Assembly: GCA_977020255.1 (NCBI GenBank)
Contig: CDROCS010001101.1
Coordinates: 558,001-622,000 of the forward strand
Direction of reading: 5' to 3'
DNA from: Obrimoposthia wandeli
Lineage: Eukaryota
Length of the DNA stretch: 64,000 nt
Below, piece by piece: positions 3,204-18,337 of the stretch (within the stretch, counting starts at the first letter, position 1; every line of letters starts with the position of its first letter). The translations under genes were made by a program, and so were the position numbers. The notes under the pieces are model-generated. The model did no database searches, was not told the DNA's origin, and saw nothing but the letters and a program-made list of their open reading frames with translations.

Positions 3204-3791
3204 TTACTGACGTACACCTTCAATATTCAAAGTCATGTCTACATGAGTAGATGCTGGACCAAGGTTAGTCGTAATACCATAATCAGTTAATTTAAGGCTT
3301 GTTTCGCCAGTAAAGCCTACACGGTAACCGCCCCAAGGATCTGAACCTTCACCAATTTTAGTCACTGGGAAAGTAATGGTTTTAGTCACACCTTTAAGGG
3401 TAAAGTCACCCGTTACAGTACCATTATCAGCGTCCGTGAATGTCATGCTTTGGCTTTGGAATGTTGCTTTAGGGAATTTTTTCACATCCAGAAAATCATC
3501 ACTTTTTAAATGCTTATCACGTTCAGCATGGTTTGAATCTAAACTTGCAGTATCAATAACCATGTTGATTTGTGATGCGTTTGGTGATTTAGCATCATAA
3601 GAGAAACCACCATCAAAGGTATTAAAGCGACCAAGTAACCAGCTGTAACCTAAATGCTTAATTTTAAATTGCACTGAAGCATGTGCACCTGCAACATCAA
3701 CTTTATAATCTGCCGCTTGCGCTACGTTTGGAGCCACTGCTGCGAATAGTGAACTTGCTGCAATGGCAGCCGCTAAAATTTGTTTTTTCAT
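3204..3791 (-). CDS. yceI: YceI-family periplasmic lipid/isoprenoid-binding protein
   Basis: Signal peptide MKKQILAAAIAA...AQA then ADYKVD..HASVQFKIKHLGYSWLLGRFNTFDG, RDKHLKSDDF, DPWGGYRVGF; start moved to ATG 3791. Confidence 0.92.
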   Translation of the reverse strand: MKKQILAAAIAASSLFAAVAPNVAQAADYKVDVAGAHASVQFKIKHLGYSWLLGRFNTFDGGFSYDAKSPNASQINMVIDTASLDSNHAERDKHLKSDDFLDVKKFPKATFQSQSMTFTDADNGTVTGDFTLKGVTKTITFPVTKIGEGSDPWGGYRVGFTGETSLKLTDYGITTNLGPASTHVDMTLNIEGVRQ

Positions 3792-3867
3792 CTGATAATC
3801 CTTCATTATTTTTATTTATTATGTTTAATTGCTGCTTTACGGTGCGTAAAGTGACAGGTATTTACTA

Positions 3868-4416
3868 CTATTTAACTTTTAACATACGCATTAACGTATT
3901 ATTTTTATTAATAAAATGGTGCTTAATTGCGGCTAACCCATGGACACCAGCTAAGACAATTAACGCCCACGCTAAAATTTCATGAATTTGACCTGCGATG
4001 TCTTCTTGATTATCAACAGCGAATGGGATTGCGGGTACGGTAAACACCTCAAACACACTGATACCACGGCCATCCGCAGTGGAAATTAAATATCCCGATA
4101 TCATTAATGTAAACATCAGTAGGTATAAACCGAGATGCACTAAGTGCGCACTTTTCAATTCAAATTTGCTAGCATGTTCATCTGCACTGTCTGGGTTGAT
4201 ATTGGTACAACGCCACAGTGTGCGGATAAATAACAGGCCAAGTAATAGAATGCCGATGCTTTTATGCAAATCGAGTGAGCCTTTGTACCAAGCATCGTAA
4301 TAAGTCAGCTCGACCATGTACAAGCCCAGCCCAAACATACCAAAAATGGTTAGCGCCATAAGCCAGTGTAATAAAATGGCCACCCAACCATAAGCCGTTG
4401 TCGTATTTCTTAACAT
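3868..4416 (-). CDS. yceJ: Cytochrome b561 (YceJ-like)
   Basis: 182 aa, four TM helices with heme His (LLHWLMA, LHKSIG, LVHLGLY, IHEILAW); upstream of yceI as in known yceJI pairs. Confidence 0.88.
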   Translation of the reverse strand: MLRNTTTAYGWVAILLHWLMALTIFGMFGLGLYMVELTYYDAWYKGSLDLHKSIGILLLGLLFIRTLWRCTNINPDSADEHASKFELKSAHLVHLGLYLLMFTLMISGYLISTADGRGISVFEVFTVPAIPFAVDNQEDIAGQIHEILAWALIVLAGVHGLAAIKHHFINKNNTLMRMLKVK

Positions 4417-4615
4417 TCGAATATGTCCCCTACATCAGTTAATTCATAGTACTGTGATTGTGACTATTAAAAAATAGTGATTAATGCGAAACTATTGTGC
4501 ATAAATGCACAGAACTTTTACATTAATTTAGATAACCTAATTCGCAATAACATGCATAAGCGATTGTTTCATCTAAACCTCCCTTCAATTTAAAGCGACT
4601 TAAGAGAATTTTGAT

Positions 4616-5512
4616 ATGAAAAATATTTCTTGGGATGATTATAAAATAGCGTATCAAGTTGCCATTGACGGTAGCTTAAGCCAAGCAGGTAAATCGCTAC
4701 ATATCAACCATGCGACAGTTCTACGACGTATTAATCAGCTCGAAAAAGCCTTGGAAATTAAATTATTCTTTCGACACCAGCGTGGTTATAAGCTGACAGA
4801 TGCGGGTGCAATCTTACTCGCGGAATTGCCGGGTCTAATAACCAGTTTTAGTAAACTAGAGCATCAGTTACAGAATGTAGAAAGTAATATTAGTGGTGAG
4901 CTGCGTATTTCAACCATCAGTTCGTATTCTTCACAGCTAGCGCCTGCATTAAAGGCTTTCAGAGACATCTATCCAGCAATACGCATTATGTTATTGTCGA
5001 CAGATGACATAGTGCCATTAGAATCTGGCGCAGCGCACGTCTCTTTACGCGTTGGCCCCAAACCAAACGGCACTGATTTAATAGTCAAACAGCTAACCCG
5101 TTTTAAAACAAACTACTATGCCTCTGCTGAGTACGTAAAAGAATTTGGCTTACCGACAACAGATAAAACACTCAATGATCATCACTGGATCTTGCCAACA
5201 CCAGACAAGTATCGGATCCCTTTTGTGCGCTATATCGTCGATAATATTGATAAAGATAGAATTGTATTTCAAAGTAACCATTTCCCAGATGTAAGCCAAG
5301 CGGTTATAGAAGGTATGGGCATTGGACCTATCGGAGAACACCAAGCCAAGCGATACCCGTCATTGGTACAAGTGACTTTAAACTCACCAGAGTCTGAAGA
5401 GGCTATGTGGTTTGTTTATCATAAAGATTCAAAGCACAGCGCCCGTGTGAAGTGTTTTTATGAGTTCTTACTTAAACGCTTAGAAAACTTAACGGCTTTA
5501 GAAACTAGATAG
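4616..5512 (+). CDS. LysR-family regulator divergent from yceJI
   Basis: 298 aa; HTH GSLSQAGKSLHINHATVLRRINQLE..LFFR; substrate-binding C-terminus. Confidence 0.9.
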   Translation: MKNISWDDYKIAYQVAIDGSLSQAGKSLHINHATVLRRINQLEKALEIKLFFRHQRGYKLTDAGAILLAELPGLITSFSKLEHQLQNVESNISGELRISTISSYSSQLAPALKAFRDIYPAIRIMLLSTDDIVPLESGAAHVSLRVGPKPNGTDLIVKQLTRFKTNYYASAEYVKEFGLPTTDKTLNDHHWILPTPDKYRIPFVRYIVDNIDKDRIVFQSNHFPDVSQAVIEGMGIGPIGEHQAKRYPSLVQVTLNSPESEEAMWFVYHKDSKHSARVKCFYEFLLKRLENLTALETR

Positions 5513-5538
5513 AAGATAGAAGATAGAAGATAGAAGAT
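5511..5538. repeat. Tandem heptamer (AGAAGAT)x4
   Basis: Four exact copies starting inside the LysR stop codon. Confidence 0.95.
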
Positions 5539-5579
5539 AGAGGAAGTCTAGCCAGAAACACTGTTTCTCGCGAATGAAA

Positions 5580-5614
5580 AAACGCTTGCTTATTAATGTT
5601 ATAAGCAAGCGTTT
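5580..5614. terminator. Bidirectional terminator-like hairpin between convergent genes
   Basis: AAACGCTTGCTTAT / ATAAGCAAGCGTTT, 14-bp stem. Confidence 0.7.
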
Positions 5615-5630
5615 GAATGTCGAATACAGA

Positions 5631-6170
5631 TTATTTCAATGTAGCAAGCGCATCTTCTAGCTGTTGCTGTATTTCTTCGTTACGTAATTGACCTGTTTCC
5701 ATATCAAAATTATCGTAAAAACTGCCCACTGAAAGTGAGGCTTTTACTTCACCAGCAAAATAAGGGGCAGAACCAGTTGCTGCTGCTAATACACTCCCTG
5801 CACCACCTGGACCTGGTGAAGTAGCTAACATGAGCATTTTTTTACCTTGATAGACCTTAGGATCAATACGTGAAGTCCAATCGAATAGGTTTTTAAATGC
5901 GGCTGTATACGAGCCGTTATGCTCAGCATACGAAATGATAATGGCATCTACACTACCAATTTTGTCATGAAACGCTTGTGCTTGCTGTGGAATACCGCTT
6001 TCTGTTTCACGATCAATACTATACAACGCCATTTCAAAGTCATTAATATCAATCACTTCGACTTCAGCATTAGTGATCACTTTTGACGTTAAGACTTCAC
6101 CTGCATAACTCACGAGTTGTTTGTTAATTGATTGGCGACTGTTACTTGCTGCTAATGCTAAAACTTTCAT
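5631..6170 (-). CDS. NAD(P)H-dependent FMN reductase (flavodoxin-like)
   Basis: 179 aa; ALAASNSRQSIN, AEHNGSYTAAFKNLFDW, ATSPGPGGA. Confidence 0.9.
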   Translation of the reverse strand: MKVLALAASNSRQSINKQLVSYAGEVLTSKVITNAEVEVIDINDFEMALYSIDRETESGIPQQAQAFHDKIGSVDAIIISYAEHNGSYTAAFKNLFDWTSRIDPKVYQGKKMLMLATSPGPGGAGSVLAAATGSAPYFAGEVKASLSVGSFYDNFDMETGQLRNEEIQQQLEDALATLK

Positions 6171-6374
6171 GGTGATTCCTTTTAAAATTCGATTTGTAAA
6201 TGCGGTTTATACGTTTGCTATTCCTAACTGCGGTCTCGCATGCAAACTTGATGAGTTTATAATAGAGTAAGCATAGCAAAAGATTAATAGCATGAATGGC
6301 AAATGATTATTTCCATATGACTCTTAATTGACTAAGATGGAGGTTATTCACATACTAATAGAAAAGGATTTAAT

Positions 6375-7289
6375 TTGGCTTATAACGCGCAACTGCTCAA
6401 CGGCATGGTTATATTTGTGGAAGTCGTCAATACAGGCAGCTTTACCCTAGCCGCTCAAAGTAGCGGCCATTCTACTTCCTATATTAGTAAAGAAATTAAC
6501 AAACTAGAATCGAGACTTGGCGTGCGCCTCATGCACAGAACCACGCGTTCATTGCGCCTGACGCCCGAAGGCGAGATCTACTTTCTACAATGCCAACAGA
6601 TAATGAGTGATGCAGAGCAAGCAGAAGAAACCCTAAACGGCCGTCAATTAGAGCCTAAAGGCACATTACGCGTCAGCTGCCCGACCAGTTTTGGTAATTC
6701 GCGGATGCAAACCATATTCTCACAGTTTCTAGACCTCTACCCACAAGTTAACCTCGAGTTAGAGTTAGATAATCGTAAAGTCGATATGGTCACAGAAGGC
6801 TTTGACGTGCTCATCCGCGGCTCTGCGCAGCTAGACGACTCAACATTCATCAGCAAGAGAATATTCAGCTCACAAGGGGTCACAATAGCATCGCCGGATT
6901 ATCTGCAGCAACATGGCACGCCACAAGTACTCGCTGACCTAGCGCAACATAAAGTCATCAGTTATAGCAATTTGAAACAACCTAATACTTGGTCTTTAAA
7001 GCATAACTCTGGCCAGCAACACCAGATCCAAGTTCAAAGCAGAGTACTCACCAACAGCTCTGAAATGGAGCTGTCTTTATGCCTTGCTGGTCACGGTATT
7101 ACCCGCATGCCACGCTTCAATCTTGGTGACGAAATAGAGACGGGTAAATTAATCGAGTTGTTTAATGATTATCAACATCAAGAAATCAATGTGTATTTGA
7201 TTTACCCAAGCCGTAAATACGTTTCTTCAAAGGTAAGGCACTTCATTGATTTTGTTACTGCAGAATTGTCAGAAGACAACATGGTTTAA
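6375..7289 (+). CDS. LysR-family regulator divergent from FMN reductase
   Basis: 304 aa (TTG start); GSFTLAA..LESRLGVRLMHRTTRSLRLTPEG. Confidence 0.92.
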   Translation: MAYNAQLLNGMVIFVEVVNTGSFTLAAQSSGHSTSYISKEINKLESRLGVRLMHRTTRSLRLTPEGEIYFLQCQQIMSDAEQAEETLNGRQLEPKGTLRVSCPTSFGNSRMQTIFSQFLDLYPQVNLELELDNRKVDMVTEGFDVLIRGSAQLDDSTFISKRIFSSQGVTIASPDYLQQHGTPQVLADLAQHKVISYSNLKQPNTWSLKHNSGQQHQIQVQSRVLTNSSEMELSLCLAGHGITRMPRFNLGDEIETGKLIELFNDYQHQEINVYLIYPSRKYVSSKVRHFIDFVTAELSEDNMV

Positions 7290-7300
7290 GCGTTCGTTCT

Positions 7301-7363
7301 AAGCCATTTGTGGGCCGAAATGGCTTAGCGATTGAGCTTTAAACTGGACTGTTCGCATTACTG
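7301..7363 (+). repeat. Dispersed repeat copy A (putative recombination site), includes 11-bp hairpin 7299-7328
   Basis: AAGCCA-N11-AAATGGCTTAGCGATTGAGCTTTAAACTGGACTGTTCGCATTACTG; 35/46 identical to copy C over 7318-7363 vs 10305-10350, ungapped. Confidence 0.8.
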
Positions 7364-7474
7364 AAAGTATGGTGATATAGAGATTAGCGCTCCACTAAGG
7401 AGATATTTATAGCTGGCTAAATATTGGATGCAGTGAAAGTAGCCAACTGTTAATGTTCCTGCCTTAGTGCCTTA

Positions 7475-7894
7475 TTATATGCTTAACTGCTTTTGTAAAA
7501 AATAACTAGTATGACCTTTAGGCATATCAGCTAATTCGCCAAAAACGGAATAACCAGCTTTGATGTAAAAGTCGAGTGCTTGGAATGTAGTTGTTTCCAA
7601 CCGAATGTTAGGAGTATTTTGAGATAAAGCATATTCCTCCATACGAGATAATAGTTTTTTCCCCCATCCACTTCCACGAATACTTTCATCAATCCATAAA
7701 CCTTGAATATGCATCCAGTTCCAATTTATTTCACCTAAAATCCCACCAACAATGTCGCCGGATTCATCTTTAACAAATGATGAAATTTTCTCTCTAAACA
7801 CTAACCCTGTGTATGATTCATTATATTCCGTCAAACCTGATTTTAAGGCTTCAAAGTCTTTTTCTTGAGGTGGAAGAGGATTAGTTAATTCCAT
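7475..7894 (-). CDS. GNAT-family N-acetyltransferase
   Basis: 139 aa; LWIDESIRGSGWGKKLL acetyl-CoA motif A, FYIKAGY. Confidence 0.9.
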   Translation of the reverse strand: MELTNPLPPQEKDFEALKSGLTEYNESYTGLVFREKISSFVKDESGDIVGGILGEINWNWMHIQGLWIDESIRGSGWGKKLLSRMEEYALSQNTPNIRLETTTFQALDFYIKAGYSVFGELADMPKGHTSYFLQKQLSI

Positions 7895-7922
7895 AATTAT
7901 GAATACCCTTGCTAGTATCTAG

Positions 7923-8555
7923 TTACTTGCTAGTCGCTAAGCGAGTTGCCAAGCCTATAAAAATAAAGCCCAATAGACCATCTATATGACGACCCAAATT
8001 CAATTTATTACCGACTAATTTACCAAACTTACTAAATGTTATAGAAAAAATACTATTAATTAATAAAGCAAAGCAACTTAACATAAACCCTAATATTAAA
8101 ATTTGAACTGAGAGCAAACCTGTGCCAGTAGTAAATTGCGGCAAAAACAAACTAAAGAACAATAAAGCCTTGGGATTAAGTAAATTATTCAAAAAACCTT
8201 TATTCATAAGACTTATATTAGTTAAGTTTTCAATTGGTTTAGTTTGGCCACTTTTAAAGTTGTTGCAGTACCAGCTAAGTAACATTTTCACACCTAAATA
8301 ACTTAAATATAACGCTCCAACTATTTTTATAGCATATGCAAACACAGGGATTGATTGCATCAATTGTCCTAAACCAAATGCAACGAGCAATGTTTGCAAA
8401 ATACCTGCACAAAACACACCTATAGAAATCATGAAGCCTGCTTTAAAACCCTTAGTAGAAGAATAGGTTGAAATCAAAACCAAATCAGGACCAGGCGAAA
8501 TGGCTAAAAAGAAAATAGCAGTAAAAAACAAAGGTAACATTGTAAAATCTATCAT
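7923..8555 (-). CDS. LysE/RhtB-family exporter
   Basis: 210 aa; AISPGPD, GFLNNLLNPKALLFF, hydrophobic. Confidence 0.9.
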   Translation of the reverse strand: MIDFTMLPLFFTAIFFLAISPGPDLVLISTYSSTKGFKAGFMISIGVFCAGILQTLLVAFGLGQLMQSIPVFAYAIKIVGALYLSYLGVKMLLSWYCNNFKSGQTKPIENLTNISLMNKGFLNNLLNPKALLFFSLFLPQFTTGTGLLSVQILILGFMLSCFALLINSIFSITFSKFGKLVGNKLNLGRHIDGLLGFIFIGLATRLATSK

Positions 8556-8798
8556 GTAGATACTCGATAATATTTAAGAGTGCTAGACAGGCCATCGAAC
8601 AAATTTTTGATGGCGATTTTTTACGTATTTTTGCATAAAAAGTGACCACGTAAATTTATTACTCGCAGCCATTTTATTGAGTATATTGATATTAATCAAT
8701 AGGTGAAAAGATAAACCTGATTGCCTTTTGACAAATTGAGACTGCGTTCATCGAACTACCAATAATACTGTATAAAATCAGCCTATTTTGCCGTTTTA

Positions 8799-8924
8799 TT
8801 AATGCATAAAATGTATGGCACATCGACATGAACATATTGCGACTGAGTAAATGTTCCAAATATCTTCTAGCCTAAATGGCTTCTTAGCACCATGTACGTG
8901 ATTTGAGTTATTTACAATCATCAT
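8799..8924 (-). pseudogene. Short ORF (41 aa), probable N-terminal remnant of a tyrosine recombinase
   Basis: Not in ORF track. MMIVNNSNHVHGAKKPFRLEDIWNIYSVAICSCRCAIHFMH*, preceded by perfect SD AGGAGGT. KKPFRLEDIW matches, from recall, the N-terminal GQKKPF(K/R)LEDIW of a widespread proteobacterial tyrosine recombinase family; no catalytic domain follows. Confidence 0.55.
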
Positions 8925-8960
8925 GACCTCCTATTGCAGATAATGGTCATGATGATTGTA
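8913..8960 (-). promoter_or_regulatory. Perfect 16-bp hairpin sequestering SD and start codon
   Basis: TACAATCATCATGACC (8913-8928) / GGTCATGATGATTGTA (8945-8960), 16-nt loop; minus strand reads AATAGGAGGTCATGATG. Confidence 0.8.
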
Positions 8961-8961
8961 G

Positions 8962-9005
8962 AATGGAACAGATACAGAGCTTGGAAATGGACAATTCCGC
9001 GTTAG
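8962..9005 (+). repeat. Dispersed repeat copy B
   Basis: AATGG-AACAGATACA-GAGCTT-GGAAA-TGGAC-AATTCC-GCGTTAG; same spacing as copy A, 29/43 matches with one gap; directly abuts the hairpin. Confidence 0.6.
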
Positions 9006-9112
9006 AACATTAGCCCAATGTTTTCCTTACAGATAAGTTCTAGTATTTAAAATCACCAGAACTCATTACTGAGGAACAAAGCTTTTTTATCGCGATAGGA
9101 AAGACTCGAACA

Positions 9113-10141
9113 TCAATTTAGGGATTGATGCAGTACTCCGGTCTCATTTAATTCAACCTTTGCGATTGCACCATTGATTAACGTGAGGTTTGGTGGGACA
9201 TGCCCGATGTCCAGATCTATCATGACTGGAATCCCAATATCTATCAGGTATTTTTCCAGTACCTCATAGTAACTAAGGCTGTGTTCACTTTCAGGCTTAG
9301 TCGCTGCACTTCGTCCAAGCAGCAAGCCGCAGATACATGAAAATACTCCCCTAAACTTCATGTTTAAAATTGTTCTTGCTAGCTCTGTGGGTGACATTTC
9401 AGCATTTTCTAGATAGAGGACGATTCCCTCAGAGTAACTCTTAGATAGACTTTTTAGATCTAAATATTCGGTTTGAAATAAATGAGATAGAGTATCCCAA
9501 CACCCGCCGATTAGCCTTCCCTCTATTGATGAGCCAGACTCGGGTTTTACCAGCCATTTCCAGTTAGTTGGTGTATCTGGCATTATTCCAGAGCTTGGAT
9601 CCCTTACGATATCTGGCCACCGACTAGCATATAGCTTCGATGCAGTTTGTGAAAAAGTTTCACCTGTGGAAGTACTTAGATGTGTAAGGGTGTTAGCTGT
9701 TAATGGATCATTAGCTTCACAAGTTAAATCCATCAAGTTCGAACAGTGTGCGGTTGCCCACCTCAATTTACTAGCAAACACGGCAGCTATCGTACTAACG
9801 TCGGAAAACCCTAAGATCCACTTTGGTCTTGCTGTTTGAAGTTTGGTAAAGTCTATAAGCGGAAGGAGTTCAATCGCTAACTCTCCTCCCCAAGGTGGGT
9901 AGATAGCGTCAATTTCGTCATCCATGAGAAATGACATAAGCTCATCCGCACGTTGCTGTGCGGGAGCGCTTACGTGTTTCTCTTGCCCGTATAGACACTT
10001 GCCTACAATGACATTAAAGCCCCTAAATTCAAGATTTTCCCGAACGACTCTAAACCTAGCATCATGTTTTTTTGCAATTCCTGATGAAAACGCAGTGATA
10101 GCTACAGTGCTACCCTGTTGTAATGGTTTGGGATATTTCAT
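9113..10141 (-). CDS. S66-family LD-carboxypeptidase / MccF-like peptidase
   Basis: 342 aa; GFSDVS (Ser), YLENAE (Glu), IGHVPP (His) triad motifs; RADELM, WGGE. Confidence 0.9.
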   Translation of the reverse strand: MKYPKPLQQGSTVAITAFSSGIAKKHDARFRVVRENLEFRGFNVIVGKCLYGQEKHVSAPAQQRADELMSFLMDDEIDAIYPPWGGELAIELLPLIDFTKLQTARPKWILGFSDVSTIAAVFASKLRWATAHCSNLMDLTCEANDPLTANTLTHLSTSTGETFSQTASKLYASRWPDIVRDPSSGIMPDTPTNWKWLVKPESGSSIEGRLIGGCWDTLSHLFQTEYLDLKSLSKSYSEGIVLYLENAEMSPTELARTILNMKFRGVFSCICGLLLGRSAATKPESEHSLSYYEVLEKYLIDIGIPVMIDLDIGHVPPNLTLINGAIAKVELNETGVLHQSLN

Positions 10142-10287
10142 TGCTACTCTCTGTCAATTTAGCTTGTAACAAAAATAAACATTAACACTCAAGAATACAA
10201 CAAAATACAATAACTTATCACAAAATAGTTTCGGATTGTTACTCTATCTGAATAAGTCCCTATTACGTAACGCTCGGAATTGGGAGA

Positions 10288-10350
10288 AAGCCAAAAATGG
10301 ACATAAATGGCTTAGAGCTCGAGCTTTAAAGGATGTAGTTCGCATTACAG
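10288..10350 (+). repeat. Dispersed repeat copy C
   Basis: AAGCCA-N11-AAATGGCTTAGAGCTCGAGCTTTAAAGGATGTAGTTCGCATTACAG; see copy A. Confidence 0.8.
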
Positions 10351-10483
10351 GTTTAATATCTAAAATAACCAAAGCTTATTTTAGTGTTTGTCGCTAATGG
10401 AAATACCTGATGTCATAAAGCTCACTCGCCAGCCAATACTTACAGCACTATCATACTCATACTAATTAATTTGTGAGGCTTTT

Positions 10484-11683
10484 ATGTTCCGATATCTTCT
10501 TTGTAGTTTTACGCTTGTATTACTTTATCCCACTGCCATCGATCTTTATCTTGTTGGTCTGCCACAAATTGCAGCAGACCTTCAGGCAACAGAATCCCAG
10601 CTTCATTTTGCTTTTTCTATCTATTTGATAGGTATGGCTACTACAATGCTTATTGCTGGGAAAGTGGCCGACTCAATTGGTCGTAAACCTGTTGCTATTA
10701 CGGGGGCTATCATCTTTACAGTATCATCAATATTTGCTGGAATGGCTGAACATAGTTCGCAGTTTCTTATTGCTAGATTCATCCAAGGGATTGGCGCGGG
10801 TAGCTGTTACGTGGTTGCCTTTGCAATTATTCGGGATACTTTAGATGACATACAACGTGCTAAAGTACTTTCTATGCTCAACGGGATCACCTGTGTTATT
10901 CCTGTTATTGCGCCCGTGATTGGCTACCTTATAATGCTCAAATTCCCATGGTCAAGTCTGTTTATTACGATGGCAGCGATGGGGGGCGTGGTCAGTCTAT
11001 TATCTTCACTGGTACTCAGAGAGACGAAACCAAGCAAGTTAGTGGAAGTTAATGACATTAATTCAGACCGTAACGTTAGGCAAGAATCATTCTTCGAGCG
11101 TTTTTTTATCAGCCGCGTGGTTATAACGTCGTTCGGTGTGATGACCATTTTAACTTATGTCAACGTGTCGCCTTTATTGATAATGGGAGTAATGGGTTTT
11201 GACAGAAGCGAGTATTCTACTATTGTGGCAGGCACAGCTTTAGTCAGTATGCTTACCTCGTTCTCTGCACCTTTTGCATTATCTATATTTAAAGAACGCA
11301 GCTTACTACTTGCATCGCAAATATTGTTTGCGCTAGCTGCTGCGATGATAACACTCACACTCTTTTTGAATTTAAATAATCATTTATATTTATTCGGTTT
11401 TGGACTGTTATGTGCGGGTTTTGCCATTGGTTTTGGTGTATCCATGAGTCAAGCTCTTAGCCCATATTCTGTGCGCGCAGGAATGGCGAGTTCATTGCTG
11501 GGTATTACTCAAGTATCTTGCTCGGCTTTGTACATTTGGTTAATGGGTGCTTTTGGCATAAATGCACTGAATATGCTGCTTACAACCCTGATTATAGGTA
11601 GCGTAATTAGCCTTGCTCTAATATTATGGATACCTAAACCTTCTCACGGCCATCAATATGAAAAAATCACTTGCCCAGCTTGA
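10484..11683 (+). CDS. mdtL: MFS multidrug transporter MdtL
   Basis: 399 aa; [38 protein letters not shown]; followed by yidZ as in enterobacteria/vibrios. Confidence 0.85.
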
Positions 11684-12647
11684 TTTTAACTTGCTGTATA
11701 CACTACAACTATTATCTAAAGAACATAGCGTATCAAGAACAGCAAAAAAGTTGAATGTCACGCCATCTACGGTGAGTAAGTCGTTGAGAAAATTGCGAGA
11801 TTGGTTTGGTGACCCTTTGTTTGTTAAAACACCTAAGGGACTAGCACCAACGCCGTTTACACAGAGCATGGAACAAGATCTTGCAGATTGGTTACAGATA
11901 AGCAGTCAACTTTTGGAAAAACATAGCGGTGATTCGCCAAAAGGTATTCAATTTGATTTAGCGATTGAATCTCCGCTTTTGCTTACAATGTTAAATGAAC
12001 TAGTCCAGGAAATTCAACAACATTATACCGATGCAAAAATAAAAACGTATAACTGGGATTACGATTCTTTAGAATCAATTATCCGTGGTGAAATCGATAT
12101 TGGGCTCACTGGAAGAGAGAGCCATCCACGCTCCAAAGAGTCACTACATCTTCTTCCTTACTTTATTGATTTTGAAGTTATGTTTTCTGATCTTCCAGTT
12201 GTATATTTGCGTAAAGATCATCCAGCCTTAGAAGAGGAGTGGAACCTCGATACTTTCCTCAAATACCCACATATCAACATCGTTTGGGAGAAATGCGAAA
12301 CTTGGGCATTAGATGAAGTACTGAATGAACAGGGGTTGAAGCGAAATATTACGCTTACTATGGCTAGCTTTGAGCAATCATTATTTATGTCGGCTCAACC
12401 AAACCAAAATATGATCACGACGGCACCTGCATATTGTCAAAATTATACAAAACAGCAACATCCAGATTTGTTGTGTTTACCCATCCCAATAGACAAGGTT
12501 TATCATGATAAACTGTTAATTCCCTTCACGTTGATTTGGCATAAACGTAACGCTCATAATCCGAAGTTACTGTGGCTGAAGGAAACTATTAAATCACTAT
12601 ATTACGTTCATACACCACATGAGAAGATCTATGACGAACTGTCATGA
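11658..12647 (+). CDS. yidZ: LysR-family regulator YidZ
   Basis: 329 aa; [37 protein letters not shown]; overlaps mdtL stop. Confidence 0.85.
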
Positions 12648-12728
12648 ACAAAATATGAGTGAGCAACAGCTCTAACGCGAAAAGGGGCAATTCCAAGTTT
12701 GCGGTGAAAAATAAGAAACCCACATACA

Positions 12729-12755
12729 AAACAAGCGCCATATAGGCGCTTGTTT
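12729..12755. terminator. Bidirectional terminator
   Basis: AAACAAGCGCC-ATATA-GGCGCTTGTTT between convergent genes. Confidence 0.75.
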
Positions 12756-12783
12756 GATTATCATTAAATAAAGAGAGTCGGTA

Positions 12784-15700
12784 TTACTTACCCACTACCT
12801 CAGGTACTTTTAAGCGATGTAACATGCGATAAAGTACAGGTACTACAAGTAAAGTCAGTACAGTCGCAAACCCTAAACCAAACATAATGGTCACGGCCAT
12901 TGGCTTAAAGAATACATCCGGTAGTAACGGCACCATGCCTAATACCGTGGTGATCGCCGCCATACAAACTGGACGAACACGACTCACAGCAGCATCAACA
13001 ACCGCTTCATATCTTTCTTTACCACTGTGGATCTCAATTTCAATCTGATCAAGTAATACGATACCATTTTTAACCAGCATCCCTGACAGACTTAAGAAAC
13101 CGAGTAACGCCATGAAACCAAAGGGTGTATTAAGGGCGAGTAGCCCCATCGTCACACCAATAATGGCCAGTGGCACTGTCGCCCAAACAATCACCGCATT
13201 TTTCACGTTGTTAAACAAGAAAATAGTGATTAAGAACATAAACAGATAACCCATAGGCATCGTCTGGAATAACGATGCTTGTGCATCAGCTGATGATTCA
13301 TATTCACCACCCCATTCAAGCGAGTAGCCCGGTGGGAAATCCATTGCTTCTACTAACGGCTGAATACGCTTTTGTAAGGTAGCAGCTGTTTCTTCACCTA
13401 ATGGATCGGGATCAGCAAATATAGTCAGCATACGTTTACGGTTTTTACGCACAACAATTGGGTCTTCCCAACGCACGTTAACCGCTAATATCACTTGCTG
13501 TAACGGCACATAACCTTTCAGTACTGGGCTCCAAATCTTCATGCCCTCAATCGTACTGATATCCACACGCTCATTTTCAGGTAAGCGAGCAACAATCGGC
13601 AATAGACTTGTACCATCACGGTAAATACCAACCGTCAAGCCACTGAATGCCATTTGCAGTAAATCATCAACGTCAGACTTAGTAATACCATAACGACGTG
13701 CCTGACTTTCATTAAAGACAGGTTCAATCACCTTAGTACGTTCGCGCCAATCGTGACGTACATAGAATGCACCTGGATCAGCACGCATAATATCGACAGT
13801 TTGCTGTGCTAAACCACGTAATACCGTAGGGTCAGAACCAACTAAACGCGCTTCAATTTTAGCTCCCGAAGAAGGCCCTAATGCGATACGCTTCAGTTTG
13901 TATTCAATATCAGGATGCAGAGCGTCAAGTTTCTTACTCACTTCAGCCATCATTGGCATAACGTCATCGTAGCTATCTACACGAATAATTAATTCACCGT
14001 AAGACGCGTAACTTTTTTCTGGCGAGTAAGTCAGCATAAAGCGCTGAGAGCCTTTACCTGCACTTGAAGATACATGCTCGACTTTTTCATTGTCGCGTAC
14101 CATGATTTCAAGTTCACGCAGTTTTTCGCTGGTTGCGCGAATATCAGTGCCTTCAGGTAACCAAACATCAACCATAAACATAGGCGTTGTTGATGATGGA
14201 AAGAATGATTGTTTTAACTGAGTAAAACCATACAAGCTAGCCACTAACATCAAGATCAAGGAGAACACAGTTGTCCACGCGTATTTCATGCACGTTTCTA
14301 ACACACGCTTGTAGGTAACAAATACGATACCCTTATACGGGTCAACATCTGCACCATCAGCGTCAACTTTCATGCCTTTAAAGAACATGTCAGCAAAGAA
14401 AGGCGTAATTGAAATCGCAGTAAACCAACTTAACATTAACGAGATAAGTAAAACGGTAAAGAGTGTCCCTGTATATTCACCGGTAGAATCTTGCGACAAA
14501 CCAATTGGCGCGAATGCGGTAACAGCAATAACCGTCGCACCGAGTAAAGGCCATTTAGTTTGGGTCACAATATCCGTTGCAGCCTGCAAGCGAGTTCGGC
14601 CTTTCTGGACCCCAATTAAGATACCCTCGACCACCACAATGGCATTATCCACCAGCATACCCAGTGCAATCACCAGTCCACCAAGTGAGATACGCTGTAA
14701 ATCAATCGACATCAAGTTCATGAATACGAATGTACCCAATACAGTGAGTAATAAAATCAGACCAATTAAGACACCTGAACGCACGCCCATAAATAACAGC
14801 AGTACAATGATAACAATACCAATCGCTTGGCCAAGGCTCACTAGGAAGCCTTTCACTGATTTATCAACTTCATCAGGCTGGCTGTAAACAGCGTCAATAT
14901 CAATACCAACGGGTTGTTGTTCTTTTAACTCAGCTAAACGCGCATAAACGCCTTTACCCATTTCAACAACATTCACACCAGAAATGAACGACACACCAAC
15001 ATTCAACGCGACTTTGCCATTGAAGGTAACAAGATTATCAGGTACTTCTTTAAAGCCACGGCTAATCGTCGCAACATCACGTAAGTAAATAAGCCCTTTA
15101 GCACCTGTTTCGGTAATGATCAAATCACCGAGCGCATCAACATCAGTAAATTCACCTGTTGGATGAATACGGATATATTCAGACCCAACTCGCATTGCAC
15201 CAGCACTTGATACGAGGTTTTGCGTTGCTAACGTGTTGTAAATAGTCGATGGTGAAATACCTAAACTACTTAAACGTTGCATCGACATTTCAATAAAGAC
15301 TTGTTCTTGCTGTACACCTGTTACTGAAACTTTACCAACACCATCAACAAGTTCTATTTCTCGGCGTAAGTAATCAACGTAATCGTTTAGCTCTTTATAA
15401 GAGTAACCATCACCCGTTATCGCCAGTAAAATACCGTAAACATCACCAAAGTCATCAATCACAGAGGGTTCAGCGACGCCTGGAGGTAAATGAGGTTTGA
15501 TATCATTCACTTTACGACGTAATTCATCCCATATTTGCGGTAAATCATCAGGGCCATAGTTGTTTTTCATCGTCACGGTGATCTGTGAGAGTCCACGGCT
15601 AGAAATAGAGTTTACTTCATCAACATACGTTAATTGCTGTATGGCTTTCTCTAACGGATAAGTAACTTCTTCTTCGACTTGTAATGGCGTTGCACCAGGA

Positions 15701-15858
15701 TAGGAAGTAACAACCATTGCATCTTTAATTGTGAATTCAGGATCTTCTAATTGCCCTAAGCCAAAAAAGGCCATCGAACCACCAATTAAGAAGATAAGTG
15801 TGAGCATCCAGCTGATCACTTTATTTTTAATAAAATAGGCTGCGATATCTTGTTTCAT
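12784..15858 (-). CDS. RND efflux transporter (AcrB/AcrD/AcrF family)
   Basis: 1024 aa; LGMLVDNAIVVVE, KNGIVLLD, RVRPVCM motifs. Confidence 0.95.
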   Translation of the reverse strand: MKQDIAAYFIKNKVISWMLTLIFLIGGSMAFFGLGQLEDPEFTIKDAMVVTSYPGATPLQVEEEVTYPLEKAIQQLTYVDEVNSISSRGLSQITVTMKNNYGPDDLPQIWDELRRKVNDIKPHLPPGVAEPSVIDDFGDVYGILLAITGDGYSYKELNDYVDYLRREIELVDGVGKVSVTGVQQEQVFIEMSMQRLSSLGISPSTIYNTLATQNLVSSAGAMRVGSEYIRIHPTGEFTDVDALGDLIITETGAKGLIYLRDVATISRGFKEVPDNLVTFNGKVALNVGVSFISGVNVVEMGKGVYARLAELKEQQPVGIDIDAVYSQPDEVDKSVKGFLVSLGQAIGIVIIVLLLFMGVRSGVLIGLILLLTVLGTFVFMNLMSIDLQRISLGGLVIALGMLVDNAIVVVEGILIGVQKGRTRLQAATDIVTQTKWPLLGATVIAVTAFAPIGLSQDSTGEYTGTLFTVLLISLMLSWFTAISITPFFADMFFKGMKVDADGADVDPYKGIVFVTYKRVLETCMKYAWTTVFSLILMLVASLYGFTQLKQSFFPSSTTPMFMVDVWLPEGTDIRATSEKLRELEIMVRDNEKVEHVSSSAGKGSQRFMLTYSPEKSYASYGELIIRVDSYDDVMPMMAEVSKKLDALHPDIEYKLKRIALGPSSGAKIEARLVGSDPTVLRGLAQQTVDIMRADPGAFYVRHDWRERTKVIEPVFNESQARRYGITKSDVDDLLQMAFSGLTVGIYRDGTSLLPIVARLPENERVDISTIEGMKIWSPVLKGYVPLQQVILAVNVRWEDPIVVRKNRKRMLTIFADPDPLGEETAATLQKRIQPLVEAMDFPPGYSLEWGGEYESSADAQASLFQTMPMGYLFMFLITIFLFNNVKNAVIVWATVPLAIIGVTMGLLALNTPFGFMALLGFLSLSGMLVKNGIVLLDQIEIEIHSGKERYEAVVDAAVSRVRPVCMAAITTVLGMVPLLPDVFFKPMAVTIMFGLGFATVLTLLVVPVLYRMLHRLKVPEVVGK

Positions 15859-16973
15859 TATTGTCCAGCCTCTGTTGTATTAGTTGAACGAGTCATCGAT
15901 TTATCGAGTATTTTCACTGATTGACCTTCACGTAAACGATTACCACCGGCAACCACGACCTTTTCACCAACAGCTAAACCAGCGCTTAAACGCACACCAT
16001 TGTTAACCACTTTCTCGGTCACAATTAAGCGTTTACTCACTGTGTTATCACTATTTACAATCCAAACAAACTTCTGAGTTAAATTTAAATCGTCACCATC
16101 TTCATTGATAATCGCTTCAAATGGTATAAAAGGTTCATCTTGCTTATAGATCTTTAACTTCTGAGCATCAGCACGTACTTCAACTGCCATACCATCAAGA
16201 ATAAATCTGTCTGTAGGCATTGGCATCGTTAGTGTGATCACGAACGAACCGACTTCAGGATCAGGTTCTGTGGTGAATTCTTTCAGGTGGGCATCATATT
16301 CATGACCATCAGCGGTGATAATCTTAGCACCCGGTCGCGAATCTTCAATTTCAGTCGCTGAGCTTTTTGAATAAATAATATCTGGTGCTTGTAATTGAAT
16401 ATCAACAGTCGTTGAGCTATGGATATTCATTACCTGCTGGCCAACTTGTACATTTTCAAATTGCTGAACAGGCACGTGTGAAATGATGCCAGAGAAAGGC
16501 GCTTTAAGTTCGGTAAAACTCAAGTTCAGTTTAGCTATATCTAACCTAGCTTTAGCTATTCGACGTTGTGCTTTAAGTTCATCAAATTGCGATGGTGCAA
16601 TATAACCTTGATCAACCAATTTAGCCGAACGACGATATTGACTGTCTGCAATCGCATACTCCGCTTTCGCATCATCAACTTCTAAACGGTAATAAGTCGG
16701 ATCAAGTTGCGCAAGAACCTGCCCTGCCGCGACTTTATCACCAGGGCGAACAGTAACCGTTGTCACCTCGCCTTGTAAGCGAAAAGATAAGCTAGACTTA
16801 TCCGCAGCCACAGCGACTGCAGGAAACGATAATCTCGCCGAATCTTCTGCCAGCTGAACTGTCGTCACCTCGACTAACTGTACTTTTTGACTTGGCTCTA
16901 TAATCGGTTTATCACAGCCTTGTAGCACTGTTATCACACCAAGCGCCATCACGATTGAGGGAAATTTATTCAT
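15858..16973 (-). CDS. RND membrane fusion protein (lipoprotein)
   Basis: 371 aa; lipobox LQGC; LSFRLQGEV, ELKAPFSGII. Confidence 0.92.
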   Translation of the reverse strand: MNKFPSIVMALGVITVLQGCDKPIIEPSQKVQLVEVTTVQLAEDSARLSFPAVAVAADKSSLSFRLQGEVTTVTVRPGDKVAAGQVLAQLDPTYYRLEVDDAKAEYAIADSQYRRSAKLVDQGYIAPSQFDELKAQRRIAKARLDIAKLNLSFTELKAPFSGIISHVPVQQFENVQVGQQVMNIHSSTTVDIQLQAPDIIYSKSSATEIEDSRPGAKIITADGHEYDAHLKEFTTEPDPEVGSFVITLTMPMPTDRFILDGMAVEVRADAQKLKIYKQDEPFIPFEAIINEDGDDLNLTQKFVWIVNSDNTVSKRLIVTEKVVNNGVRLSAGLAVGEKVVVAGGNRLREGQSVKILDKSMTRSTNTTEAGQ

Positions 16974-16974
16974 G

Positions 16975-18009
16975 TTACAGTCCTCGTTCCTTGATCCAAG
17001 ATCTTACTTTCTGACCTTCGCGTAATTCGTTAACGCCAGAGATTGCAACATTGTCACCATCATTCAGCCCTTTAGACACACGTCCATTTTCATCTAATTC
17101 GATTTCTCGTTTATGAGCAATACCTTGATCGTCGATCTGCCATACATAATAGCTATCACCTTTTTTCATCAATGCTTGTGGAGATAGCGATCCTGAATTA
17201 CCTTTTGGCAATGCGATACGCACAGCACCAGCCATACCCGGCAGGATATTTTTACCTTCAGGGCGGTCCATAAATAGCGTGACTTTATAACTGGAATTAG
17301 TCGAATTTGCTTCAGTATCAATTTCTTTAAATTCCGCAGGAAACTCTTCACCAGGAATTGTATCGAAAATAACGGTTGGGCTACGACTGTAGTCATTATT
17401 AAAACGGGTGAGTAGCTGTTCAGGTAACTGGAAAGTGACGTTAATAATACCAGCGCGTTGAATATGAACGACAGCTTCTTTTGCCATGACATATTCATGA
17501 TTTTCTTTCAATGATAACGATAAAGTACCGTCATAGGGTGCCACTAAGGTCGCATAGCTTAAGTTAGACTCTTGCTTGCTTAATGTCGCTTGAGCTTGAT
17601 TACGCTTAGCTTTAGATGTATCAAATGCGAGTTCTGAAACAACATTGGTTTTACGTAATTTCTCATCTCGTTTAAACTGCACTGAAGCAAGTTCATAATT
17701 AGCCTGAGCTTGTTCTACTTGAAGCGAAAATTCGTCTTGATTCAAGCTAGCGAGCTTTTGTCCTTTAACCACGTTTTCACCTGGGTTCACATCCATCGAC
17801 GATAAAACACCAGAAACACGAAATGCCAGAACCGCTTTATCTCCAGCTTCAACTACACCTGGGAATGTTCTGAAGGTATCTTTAATACCAACATCCACCG
17901 TTTGTAACTTAACTGGTCGAGAGTCCGGTTCTGGAATGACGACTTGTTCTTCACTGCAGCCAGAAAGTAGCAGGCCAGCAACAACCGTGGTCGCTATAAT
18001 TCCCTTCAT
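16975..18009 (-). CDS. Second RND membrane fusion protein (lipoprotein)
   Basis: 344 aa; lipobox LSGC; LAFRVSGVL, LVAPYDG. Confidence 0.92.
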   Translation of the reverse strand: MKGIIATTVVAGLLLSGCSEEQVVIPEPDSRPVKLQTVDVGIKDTFRTFPGVVEAGDKAVLAFRVSGVLSSMDVNPGENVVKGQKLASLNQDEFSLQVEQAQANYELASVQFKRDEKLRKTNVVSELAFDTSKAKRNQAQATLSKQESNLSYATLVAPYDGTLSLSLKENHEYVMAKEAVVHIQRAGIINVTFQLPEQLLTRFNNDYSRSPTVIFDTIPGEEFPAEFKEIDTEANSTNSSYKVTLFMDRPEGKNILPGMAGAVRIALPKGNSGSLSPQALMKKGDSYYVWQIDDQGIAHKREIELDENGRVSKGLNDGDNVAISGVNELREGQKVRSWIKERGL

Positions 18010-18337
18010 ATAATCACCCTAATAATGTGCTATTTATCTACCGATTCATATTTATGTATAAACAAGTCAAGTTGTCTGAATAGACGTTTACTCAACTATA
18101 GCCTTTAAAATAGTATTTACAATGACTTATATCTTATATGCTATATCGTATATAATAAAGCCTATCTAAAAGTCATCCTCATTTCAAAGACAGACAATGA
18201 CCAGAGTCAATAGTTCTATTATGACGGGGCGTTTAAAGGGAGGTGGGATAAATGATTAACAATGAGCTAAATAGATAGCGAATAGCTTATTAAATAGACG
18301 GCAACCTAAATTGCCTTATTTATTGATGCGCAGAGAG

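What the first reader, a model, noticed from the sequence alone, without database searches (positions are those of the whole stretch)
7299..10350. Cassette-like array bounded by three direct copies of a novel site, linked to a tyrosine recombinase remnant
Seen: copies at 7318-7363 (A), 8962-9005 (B) and 10305-10350 (C) share AATGG-N10-GAGCTT and a TTC(C)GCRTTA end with the same spacing. A vs C is 35/46 ungapped, plus a shared AAGCCA 17 nt upstream. They bracket minus-strand cargo: GNAT+LysE+short ORF between A and B, S66 peptidase between B and C. Copy B sits against the 5' hairpin of an ORF starting KKPFRLEDIW. Established: tyrosine recombinases act on short sites with a 6-8 bp spacer, and GNAT, LysE and peptidase genes are typical cassette cargo. 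Inference: a decayed integron-like gene-capture system using a non-IntI recombinase. B would be the recombinase-proximal (attI-like) site, A and C cassette-junction sites, and the invariant GAGCTT a candidate crossover core. The sites do not fit attC (no RYYYAAC..GTTRRRY).
Basis: partly seen in the sequence, partly recalled or inferred. Interest (0 to 1): 0.82.

Follow-up and report, generated by a model that had tools for sequence, protein, structure and literature searches.

The report
Fossil recombinase-linked gene-cassette array in Moritella
The repeats mark a decayed row of swappable gene units that belongs to a Moritella-wide family of about 120-base sites tied to a small, unstudied tyrosine recombinase, so it works like an integron but is not one.

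Summary
The window is a Moritella contig inside a 1.35 Gb host assembly. Copies A and C are real homologues and belong to a ~120-nt repeat family (R1). R1 is found in all 13 Moritellaceae genomes searched, usually just 3' of co-oriented variable genes and often in same-orientation rows. A second ~85-nt family (T2) marks the other end of each unit.

The 41-codon ORF beside B is a true N-terminal remnant of a 199-aa, catalytic-domain-only tyrosine recombinase. An intact copy in another Moritella starts ~60 nt from an R1 site and heads a mercury-resistance unit.

Window 7299-12708 is missing from two related genomes. One metagenome holds a form without B and the S66 gene.

No breakpoint supports GAGCTT as the crossover. 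The candidates are an 11-8-11 palindrome and a dif-like core, both inside R1. The sites lack the attC signature, and the true integron integrases of Moritella lie elsewhere.

This copy is a fossil: no intact recombinase of this family was found on the Moritella contigs. I found no published description. Earlier scan notes list other integron-like rows in this assembly; none overlaps this one and I did not check them.

The parts
7297..7413 (+). R1 site copy A. It is full length: palindrome, spacer, dif-like core and right arm. It forms the left end of the inserted block.
   Evidence: Covariance model hit of 115 bits and nhmmer model positions 2-118. Homology with M. dasanensis stops at 7298.
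7475..7894 (-). GNAT acetyltransferase cargo gene
   Evidence: PF00583, E 1.7e-12.
7923..8555 (-). LysE-type exporter cargo gene
   Evidence: PF01810, E 1.5e-26.
8736..8805 (+). Conserved segment upstream of the cargo, shared with two other loci that carry a different GNAT gene
   Evidence: 82-84% identity to L034 and L109.
8806..8849 (+). T2 site with its second dif-like core and arm. It is truncated where it meets the recombinase remnant.
   Evidence: nhmmer E 1.4e-16; alignment A6.
8850..8924 (-). N-terminal remnant (about 25 codons) of the 199-aa tyrosine recombinase
   Evidence: tblastn finds 22 residues at 59-71% identity to plasmid homologues. Residues 1-26 are 85% identical to the intact Moritella gene. 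All 16 plasmid hits lie under annotated tyrosine recombinase genes.
8913..8960 (-). Perfect 16-bp stem that pairs the ribosome binding site and start codon of the recombinase gene
   Evidence: I18. RNA fold -25.2 kcal/mol, z -5.0, and conserved in two other genomes with one compensatory pair change.
8961..9075 (+). B: the decayed recombinase-proximal copy of R1
   Evidence: Alignments with L125, L142 and L152. Not detected by the model.
9113..10141 (-). Peptidase S66 (LD-carboxypeptidase family) cargo gene
   Evidence: PF02016 and PF17676. A metagenome contig lacks 8971-10268.
10283..10345 (+). R1 copy C. It has the palindrome, the spacer and the left half of the core; beyond that it runs into the MFS gene's own upstream sequence.
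   Evidence: 102 bits. The right part is shared only with the paralogous MFS loci on C506 and in M. dasanensis.
10484..12647 (+). MFS transporter and second LysR regulator, part of the inserted block
   Evidence: Pfam. Absent at this locus in both relatives. A 78-91% paralogue lies on contig C506.
12617..12693 (+). Terminal T2 copy, forming the right end of the inserted block. Homology with the relatives resumes at about 12709.
   Evidence: nhmmer E 1.8e-6.

Best explanation
The region is a fossil row of small integrative gene units from a family that pervades Moritella.

Anatomy, in the orientation of the repeats: each unit is R1, then cargo genes on the opposite strand, then T2. R1 (~120 nt) holds three features:
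- an 11-8-11 palindrome, CTAAGCCATT-N8-AATGGCTTAG;
- a spacer;
- a dif-like core, GCATTAC-N5-GTATGG.
T2 (~85 nt) holds a second dif-like core and a diverged copy of the palindrome.

The autonomous form carries a 199-aa tyrosine recombinase gene between T2 and the next R1. The protein has the catalytic domain only. A stem that hides its ribosome binding site keeps the gene quiet.

Inferred mechanism: the recombinase joins a circular unit to an existing R1 site, so units pile up head to tail at intergenic hotspots. The recombinase genes then decay, leaving site-flanked cargo that can move only with help in trans.

In the window the order is: LysR | A, GNAT, LysE, T2 | recombinase stump | B, S66 | C, MFS, LysR2, T2 | RND pump gene.

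Shown: the family, the unit anatomy, the link to the recombinase, and the presence/absence differences between genomes. Inferred: that this recombinase performs the reaction, and where strands are exchanged.
For: Family and spread:
- At least 19 model hits in the host assembly.
- At least 13 hits in M. dasanensis.
- Hits in 13 of 13 Moritellaceae genomes.
- Hits in 4 of about 114 other genomes of the order.
- 74 unique copies were collected, with strongly conserved blocks.

Anatomy:
- The gene next to a copy ends 40-90 nt away on the opposite strand.
- Seven rows start with R1 and end with T2, with T2-R1 composites between units.

Link to the recombinase:
- The intact gene in G008 starts ~60 nt from an R1 copy. 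It is followed by T2, a mer operon and another R1.
- Broken copies in G006, G005, G007 and G004 also lie within ~110 nt of an R1 copy.
- The window's leader, stem and proximal site are near-identical to those loci.
- A T2-like site stands beside the homologue in Shewanella violacea.

Mobility:
- Window 7299-12708 is absent in M. dasanensis and in a Moritella MAG.
- Metagenome contigs lack 8971-10268, or diverge from the window at 7370, inside the core.
- The MFS-LysR2 module recurs at two other loci behind the same half site.
- L099 joins the R1 left half directly to the T2 arm, as expected after loss of a unit.

Recombinase type: PF00589 only, and the nearest solved structures are XerD.
Against: - No recombination was observed. 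The 'go-back' joints in run X4 come from other family copies, not from circles.
- Only 1 of 13 Moritellaceae genomes has an intact recombinase gene, and none was found on the window's own Moritella contigs.
- The run X3 form without S66 carries a 2-nt filler, and its ends do not fall at equivalent site positions. It may be an ordinary deletion.
- Left and right halves of R1 are not freely reshuffled across 45 copies.
- The two relatives show no recognisable empty target at this locus, so how the first unit enters is unexplained.
- No matching flanking sites could be shown around the homologue on a Vibrio plasmid.
Confidence: 0.6

Rival explanations
1. The modules are moved by the host XerC/XerD recombinases acting on the two dif-like cores, as proposed for pdif modules of Acinetobacter plasmids. 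On this reading the small recombinase is a passenger or only a helper.
For: The M. dasanensis dif candidate reads ACTGCGCATAA-TGTATA-TTATGGTAAAT. The T2 core matches it at 18 of 28 positions, including 9 of 11 in the XerD arm. The R1 core shares TCGCAT.A and TATGG..AAAT. Cargo lies between two cores in direct orientation. Rows persist in genomes that lack the small recombinase.
Against: The R1 right arm is one base longer than a XerD arm. The cores sit inside much longer conserved sites. The small recombinase gene is repeatedly found fixed to one end of R1. No Xer binding or reaction was tested.
Confidence: 0.12
2. R1 and T2 are not recombination sites. They are conserved untranslated modules (terminator, small RNA or protein-binding elements) or MITE-like repeats that ride on horizontally acquired genes. 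The islands themselves would be exchanged by homologous recombination through flanking core genes.
For: R1 always lies in the 3' untranslated region of the neighbouring gene. Two local stems are conserved, the small one with a compensatory change in copy A. Halves of R1 are not freely shuffled. Most genomes lack an intact recombinase.
Against: No Rfam family matches. The large stem keeps its sequence rather than covarying. Both cores have the inverted half-site layout typical of tyrosine recombinase sites. The recombinase gene is physically tied to the site in at least five genomes. Hybrid junctions exist.
Confidence: 0.15
3. It is an ordinary integron cassette row that has lost its integrase (a CALIN), and R1 is a Moritella-type attC.
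For: The genes are co-oriented and separated by ~120-200-nt repeats. Six of 13 Moritellaceae genomes encode a true integron integrase.
Against: No RYYYAAC..GTTRRRY pair occurs in A, B, C or either T2. There is no end-to-end palindrome, only two local stems. R1 copies do not lie beside the IntI genes. The gene attached to the site is a 199-aa recombinase that scores 20 bits against the IntI model, whose cut-off is 265.
Confidence: 0.03

Closest known systems
Integrons (IntI, attI, attC cassettes)
   Same: Rows of co-oriented, mostly single-gene or few-gene units, each followed by a ~100-nt recombination-type site. A tyrosine recombinase gene sits next to one site copy. Cargo is varied: GNAT, exporters, peptidases, defence-like genes.
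   Different: The recombinase is 199 aa with the catalytic domain only, and is not IntI. The sites lack the attC inverse-core/core signature and the overall hairpin. The junctions are composite (R1 plus T2). The recombinase gene travels within a unit instead of sitting on a fixed platform.
Tandem accretion of integrative elements and cis-mobilizable elements (CIMEs), reviewed in PMC5704250
   Same: Elements integrate next to one another at att sites. They lose their recombination genes and remain as att-flanked cargo that a related element could mobilise.
   Different: The units here are very small (0.5-4 kb) and do not target a tRNA or gene end. They have long conserved sites at both ends and use a minimal recombinase. 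I took the CIME concept from the review's listing; it was not tested here.
pdif modules of Acinetobacter plasmids and elements that exploit Xer (IMEX). This comparison is from my own knowledge; no paper was read.
   Same: Cargo is bracketed by short dif-like sites with two inverted arms around a 5-6-nt centre.
   Different: Here the sites are in direct orientation, are embedded in 85-120-nt conserved modules, lie on the chromosome at many loci away from dif, and are linked to a dedicated recombinase.
Additive flexible genomic islands of Alteromonas (PMC4898812)
   Same: Hotspots where variable numbers of gene cassettes accumulate and turn over fast between close relatives.
   Different: That work describes hotspots, mostly at tRNA genes or integrons. 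It does not describe this site family or this recombinase.

Membership tests
Integron | attC sites with RYYYAAC ... GTTRRRY inverse core and core that are complementary to each other | tested here: not met
   No such pair occurs on either strand of A, B, C or either T2 copy. The formal attC covariance model of IntegronFinder was not available.
Integron | IntI-type integrase adjacent to the cassette row | tested here: not met
   The attached recombinase scores 20 bits against TIGR02249, whose cut-off is 265. The true IntI genes of six Moritellaceae genomes lie far from R1 copies.
Integron | Site folds as one long imperfect hairpin | tested here: not met
   The consensus structure has only two local stems, of 9 and 6 pairs.
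Tyrosine recombinase (PF00589) | Catalytic domain with the Arg, His-x-x-Arg, His and Tyr motifs | tested here: met
   The intact G008 protein hits PF00589 at E 3.9e-15. Its sequence shows LRSCDL, HSMRRT, LGHTK and IRYLG. The nearest solved structure is XerD. The window keeps only about 25 N-terminal codons.
Xer/dif-type site | 11-nt XerC arm, 6-8-nt centre, 11-nt XerD arm, bound and cut by XerC/XerD | tested here: inconclusive
   The T2 core matches the M. dasanensis dif candidate at 18 of 28 positions, and the R1 core has a 12-nt right arm. Binding cannot be tested with these tools.
Site-specific integrative element | Direct repeats of the site at both ends, with presence/absence between related genomes | tested here: met
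   The G008 element is flanked by two R1 copies. The window block is absent in two relatives. The S66 part is absent in one metagenome population.
Site-specific integrative element | Excision to a circle with a defined junction | not testable with these tools
   Only contigs of public runs were available, and no true circle junction was seen.

The most novel reading that the evidence does not exclude
A previously undescribed gene-capture system exists in marine Gammaproteobacteria, independent of integrons. A 199-aa, catalytic-domain-only tyrosine recombinase has at least 8000 homologues in Vibrio, Shewanella, Pseudoalteromonas, Photobacterium and Moritella. On this reading it inserts and excises small cargo units at composite ~200-nt junction sites, building rows of defence, resistance and transport genes at many chromosomal hotspots.
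Probability: 0.35. Interest if true: 0.8.

Novelty: new variant of a known kind. Interest (0 to 1): 0.62.

Why it matters
If the small recombinase does move these units, Moritella and probably many marine relatives have a second cassette system besides integrons. It would have its own site grammar and a minimal enzyme. That would explain part of the fast-turnover 'additive' islands of marine bacteria, including units that carry mercury resistance and phage-defence-like genes. It would also offer a compact recombinase-and-site pair for study. The site models built here make such rows findable in genomes where integron finders see nothing.

Tried and rejected
- Rfam scan of six loci with the repeat: nothing relevant.
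- BLAST-type search of the host assembly with A: finds only A itself, being too insensitive for 77% copies.
- Pfam on the two short ORFs at 8695-8924: no hit. The remnant was recognised only by tblastn against plasmids.
- Recombinase next to the rows in M. dasanensis: none of its 11 PF00589 genes is adjacent. One is XerC in the dapF operon and one belongs to an IS91-type element.
- Crossover inside the palindrome loop as the explanation for B: dropped, because four other recombinase-proximal copies continue into normal R1 sequence.
- Test for free reshuffling of R1 halves: no dip in correlation at the core.
- Circular forms: the go-back joints in run X4 carry other spacer letters, so they are other family copies. 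The 8810-to-12684 joint in run X1 is cross-mapping between T2 copies.
- Flanking sites around the homologue on a Vibrio campbellii plasmid: no convincing repeat, only one palindrome with a TGTCCA centre after the cargo.
- Promoter scan of 7200-10500: not above the shuffled controls.
The S. violacea genome is not in the searchable collection.
- Literature: four searches found no description of this site family or of this recombinase as a cassette system.
Full report
**Source.** The window is G000:C1101:558001-622000, in a 1.35 Gb, 6912-contig assembly. The LysR gene at 6375-7289 is 97% identical to that of Moritella dasanensis ArB 0140 and 88% identical to that of a Moritella MAG. The contig is therefore Moritella DNA inside a larger host assembly. 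C1101 is 709 kb, and a second Moritella-like contig, C506, is 3.78 Mb.

**The observation.**
- They match 35/46 ungapped, AAGCCA lies 17 nt upstream of both, and the match extends to 45/63 over 63 nt.
- AATGGCTTAG-N5-GAGCTTTAAA occurs only at A and C, against 0.01 expected.
- The looser AATGG-N10-GAGCTT hits A, B and C only, against 0.08 expected.
- Pfam confirms GNAT, LysE and peptidase S66, plus an MFS transporter and a second LysR gene to the right.

**A repeat family.** A pattern scan of the assembly found further copies, which extend the homology to about 120 nt. I built a covariance model, R1, from six copies. Its results:
- at least 19 copies in the assembly;
- at least 13 in M. dasanensis and 3 in the MAG;
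- copies in all 13 Moritellaceae genomes of the collection;
- copies in 4 of about 114 other genomes sampled from the order.

In the window, run without filters, R1 finds A and C and nothing at B. Rfam has no matching family. Across 45 unique full copies, the conserved blocks are CTAA, TGGACA, GGCTTAG, CTT.AAA, TTCGCATTAC, AAAGTAT and AAATTGAGATTAA.

**Context of the copies.** Next to a copy in + orientation, the gene on its right is almost always on the minus strand and ends 40-90 nt away. Copies form rows in one orientation, with one to four co-oriented genes between them. Examples are five copies in G004:C95, four in G012, three in M. dasanensis C1, and the aspA locus on the window's own contig. 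The cargo is varied: HAD hydrolase, GNAT, DUF4041/T5orf172, a SEC-C protein, DUF6988, an OmpA-like protein and a mer operon.

**A second site family.** Window 8736-8849 recurs at other loci. An HMM of its conserved part (T2, ~85 nt) finds 54 unique copies. Mapping R1 and T2 together gives a consistent picture.
- In the orientation of R1, seven rows begin with R1 at the chromosomal junction and end with T2.
- Internal junctions are T2-R1 composites. Some have two adjacent palindromes 11-13 nt apart, and some have one.
- The tail of T2 is a diverged copy of the R1 palindrome.
- T2 starts with a core very like that of R1: GCATGAT-AAAAT-GTATGG against GCATTAC-AGAAA-GTATGG.

The window fits this pattern: A (R1) is at the left end, T2 lies at 8806-8849, C (R1) at 10283-10345, and a terminal T2 at 12617-12693.

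**The recombinase.** The 41-codon ORF at 8802-8924 has no Pfam hit. By tblastn, however, it hits 16 plasmids of Vibrio, Shewanella and Photobacterium, every time under an annotated tyrosine recombinase gene of about 197 aa. Searching those proteins back against the Moritella loci gave the following:
- a full-length intact homologue in G008, 199 aa, whose first residues match the window ORF;
- frameshifted or fragmentary copies in other genomes.

In G008 the order in gene direction is: small gene, R1, recombinase, T2, merR-T-P-A, R1, chromosome. Across the family, 8 of 13 genomes have hits but only G008 is intact. G006 and G005 each carry one in-frame stop. In G006, G005, G007 and G004 the gene or fragment lies within about 110 nt of an R1 copy. 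On the window's Moritella contigs only the 26-residue stump was found.

The protein has the PF00589 domain alone, reaches no curated NCBIfam cut-off, and is nearest to XerD among solved structures. The family is very large: at least 8000 proteins at E<=1e-10, 65-76% identical across Vibrio, Shewanella, Pseudoalteromonas, Photobacterium and Xenorhabdus. All of them are named only 'tyrosine-type recombinase/integrase'. In Shewanella violacea the gene stands at the edge of an island after prmC, with a T2-like site joined to an R1-type half core just upstream.

**What B is.** I aligned window 8880-9115 with the recombinase-proximal regions of G008, G007 and G006. The leader is near-identical: the TGTTCCATTC motif, then a perfect 16-bp stem that pairs the ribosome binding site and start codon. 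The stem folds at -25 kcal/mol (z -5) and shows one compensatory pair change in G008. Upstream of the leader the other genomes have an R1 copy whose outer palindrome arm differs. The window has the same skeleton, but with many substitutions and a 7-nt gap. B is therefore a decayed recombinase-proximal R1.

**Presence and absence.**
- Against M. dasanensis, window 3204-7298 and 12709-18146 are collinear, while 7299-12708 is replaced by an unrelated 838 bp. In the MAG, about 50 bp separate the LysR stop from the terminator of the RND pump gene. The left break is the outer edge of A's palindrome, and the right break follows the terminal T2.
- Contigs of public runs add three points. A food metagenome holds both contigs with S66 and a contig joining 8970 to 10269 with two extra letters, that is, without B and S66. 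A marine metagenome has 660 other letters between 7370 (inside the GTATGG half of A's core) and 7494. Several loose ends show other contents after the LysR gene.
- The MFS-LysR2 module with C's half site recurs on C506 and in M. dasanensis, behind a T2-type palindrome.
- In L099 the left half of R1 is joined at the core to the T2 arm with no cargo between them.

**Where strands might be exchanged.** Two places inside R1 are candidates.
- The palindrome has the 11-8-11 layout of tyrosine recombinase cores. Unit and island ends coincide with its outer edge, and the recombinase-proximal copies look like hybrids there.
- The dif-like core is where C, L099, the S. violacea site and the marine metagenome contig change partner. 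The M. dasanensis dif candidate is ACTGCGCATAA-TGTATA-TTATGGTAAAT, and the T2 core matches it at 18 of 28 positions.

A Mantel-type test on 45 copies shows no loss of correlation across the core, so reshuffling there is not frequent. No breakpoint requires GAGCTT. The nearest case is the C506 paralogue, whose homology starts at AGCTT, which is simply the inner edge of the palindrome.

**Not an integron.** None of the sites has a complementary RYYYAAC..GTTRRRY pair, and the consensus structure has only two local stems. Six of 13 Moritellaceae genomes do encode a true IntI (387-400 bits), but no R1 copy lies beside it.

**Verdict.** The finding is real and richer than described. It is a decayed instance of a genus-wide family of site-flanked gene units tied to a minimal tyrosine recombinase. 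The register of B, the proposed crossover and the extent of the block are wrong. Four literature searches found no description of the system. The closest concepts are integrons, accretion of integrative elements into cis-mobilizable elements (PMC5704250), Xer-dependent modules, and the additive islands of Alteromonas (PMC4898812). The mechanism is inferred, not shown. This copy has no working recombinase of its own.

Noticed in passing
window 8913-8960: A perfect 16-bp stem sequesters the AGGAGG ribosome binding site and the ATG of the recombinase gene. It is conserved in G008 and G007 with one compensatory pair change (GACC/GGTC to GACT/AGTC). It probably blocks translation from read-through transcripts.
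   Followed up: partly
L145 (M. dasanensis C54, 96-2041); L015 1232-1486: An IS91-family transposase gene is preceded by a 295-aa tyrosine recombinase gene. A fragment of such a transposase lies right beside an R1 copy on assembly contig C5986. An earlier scan note describes a similar pair landing inside cassette sites.
   Followed up: partly
G010, G012, G003, G011, G013, G007 (places listed): Six of 13 Moritellaceae genomes encode a true integron integrase (387-400 bits to TIGR02249; the G010 copy has one TGA). Moritella therefore has classical integrons as well as the R1/T2 rows.
   Followed up: no
L037 10925-11762: M. dasanensis carries a different 838-bp insert, with a small membrane-protein-like ORF and an AT-rich ATTA repeat, at exactly the same left junction (GCGTTCGTT|) as the window's block.
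   Followed up: no
L148 11234-14090 (G008): A complete merR-merT-merP-merA operon is carried as the cargo of the only intact recombinase-bearing unit.
   Followed up: partly
G006:C23:67291-67887 and G005:C19:57998-58561: Two recombinase genes, 91-92% identical to the intact one, each carry a single in-frame stop (TAG, TAA). Whether this is recent inactivation or read-through is open.
   Followed up: no
L140 2085-2330; L142 13010-13060: GGCTTAG is repeated four to five times at 15-20-nt spacing between T2 and R1 in one junction. TGTTCCATTCTA is duplicated upstream of one recombinase gene. These may be arm-type binding sites.
   Followed up: no
window 10484-12647; L031 2541-4965; L108 8590-10923: The MFS transporter plus LysR pair exists in a second copy on contig C506, where both genes appear broken (ORFs of 162 and 136 aa), and at another locus of M. 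dasanensis.
   Followed up: partly
L032 4681-8100 (C1101:464.7-468.1 kb): A neighbouring row on the same contig carries a DUF4041/T5orf172 protein and a SEC-C motif protein, which are candidate phage-defence cargo.
   Followed up: no
L111 1498-1525 (M. dasanensis C2:37231-37258): A candidate chromosomal dif site, ACTGCGCATAATGTATATTATGGTAAAT, with a single match in that genome.
   Followed up: partly
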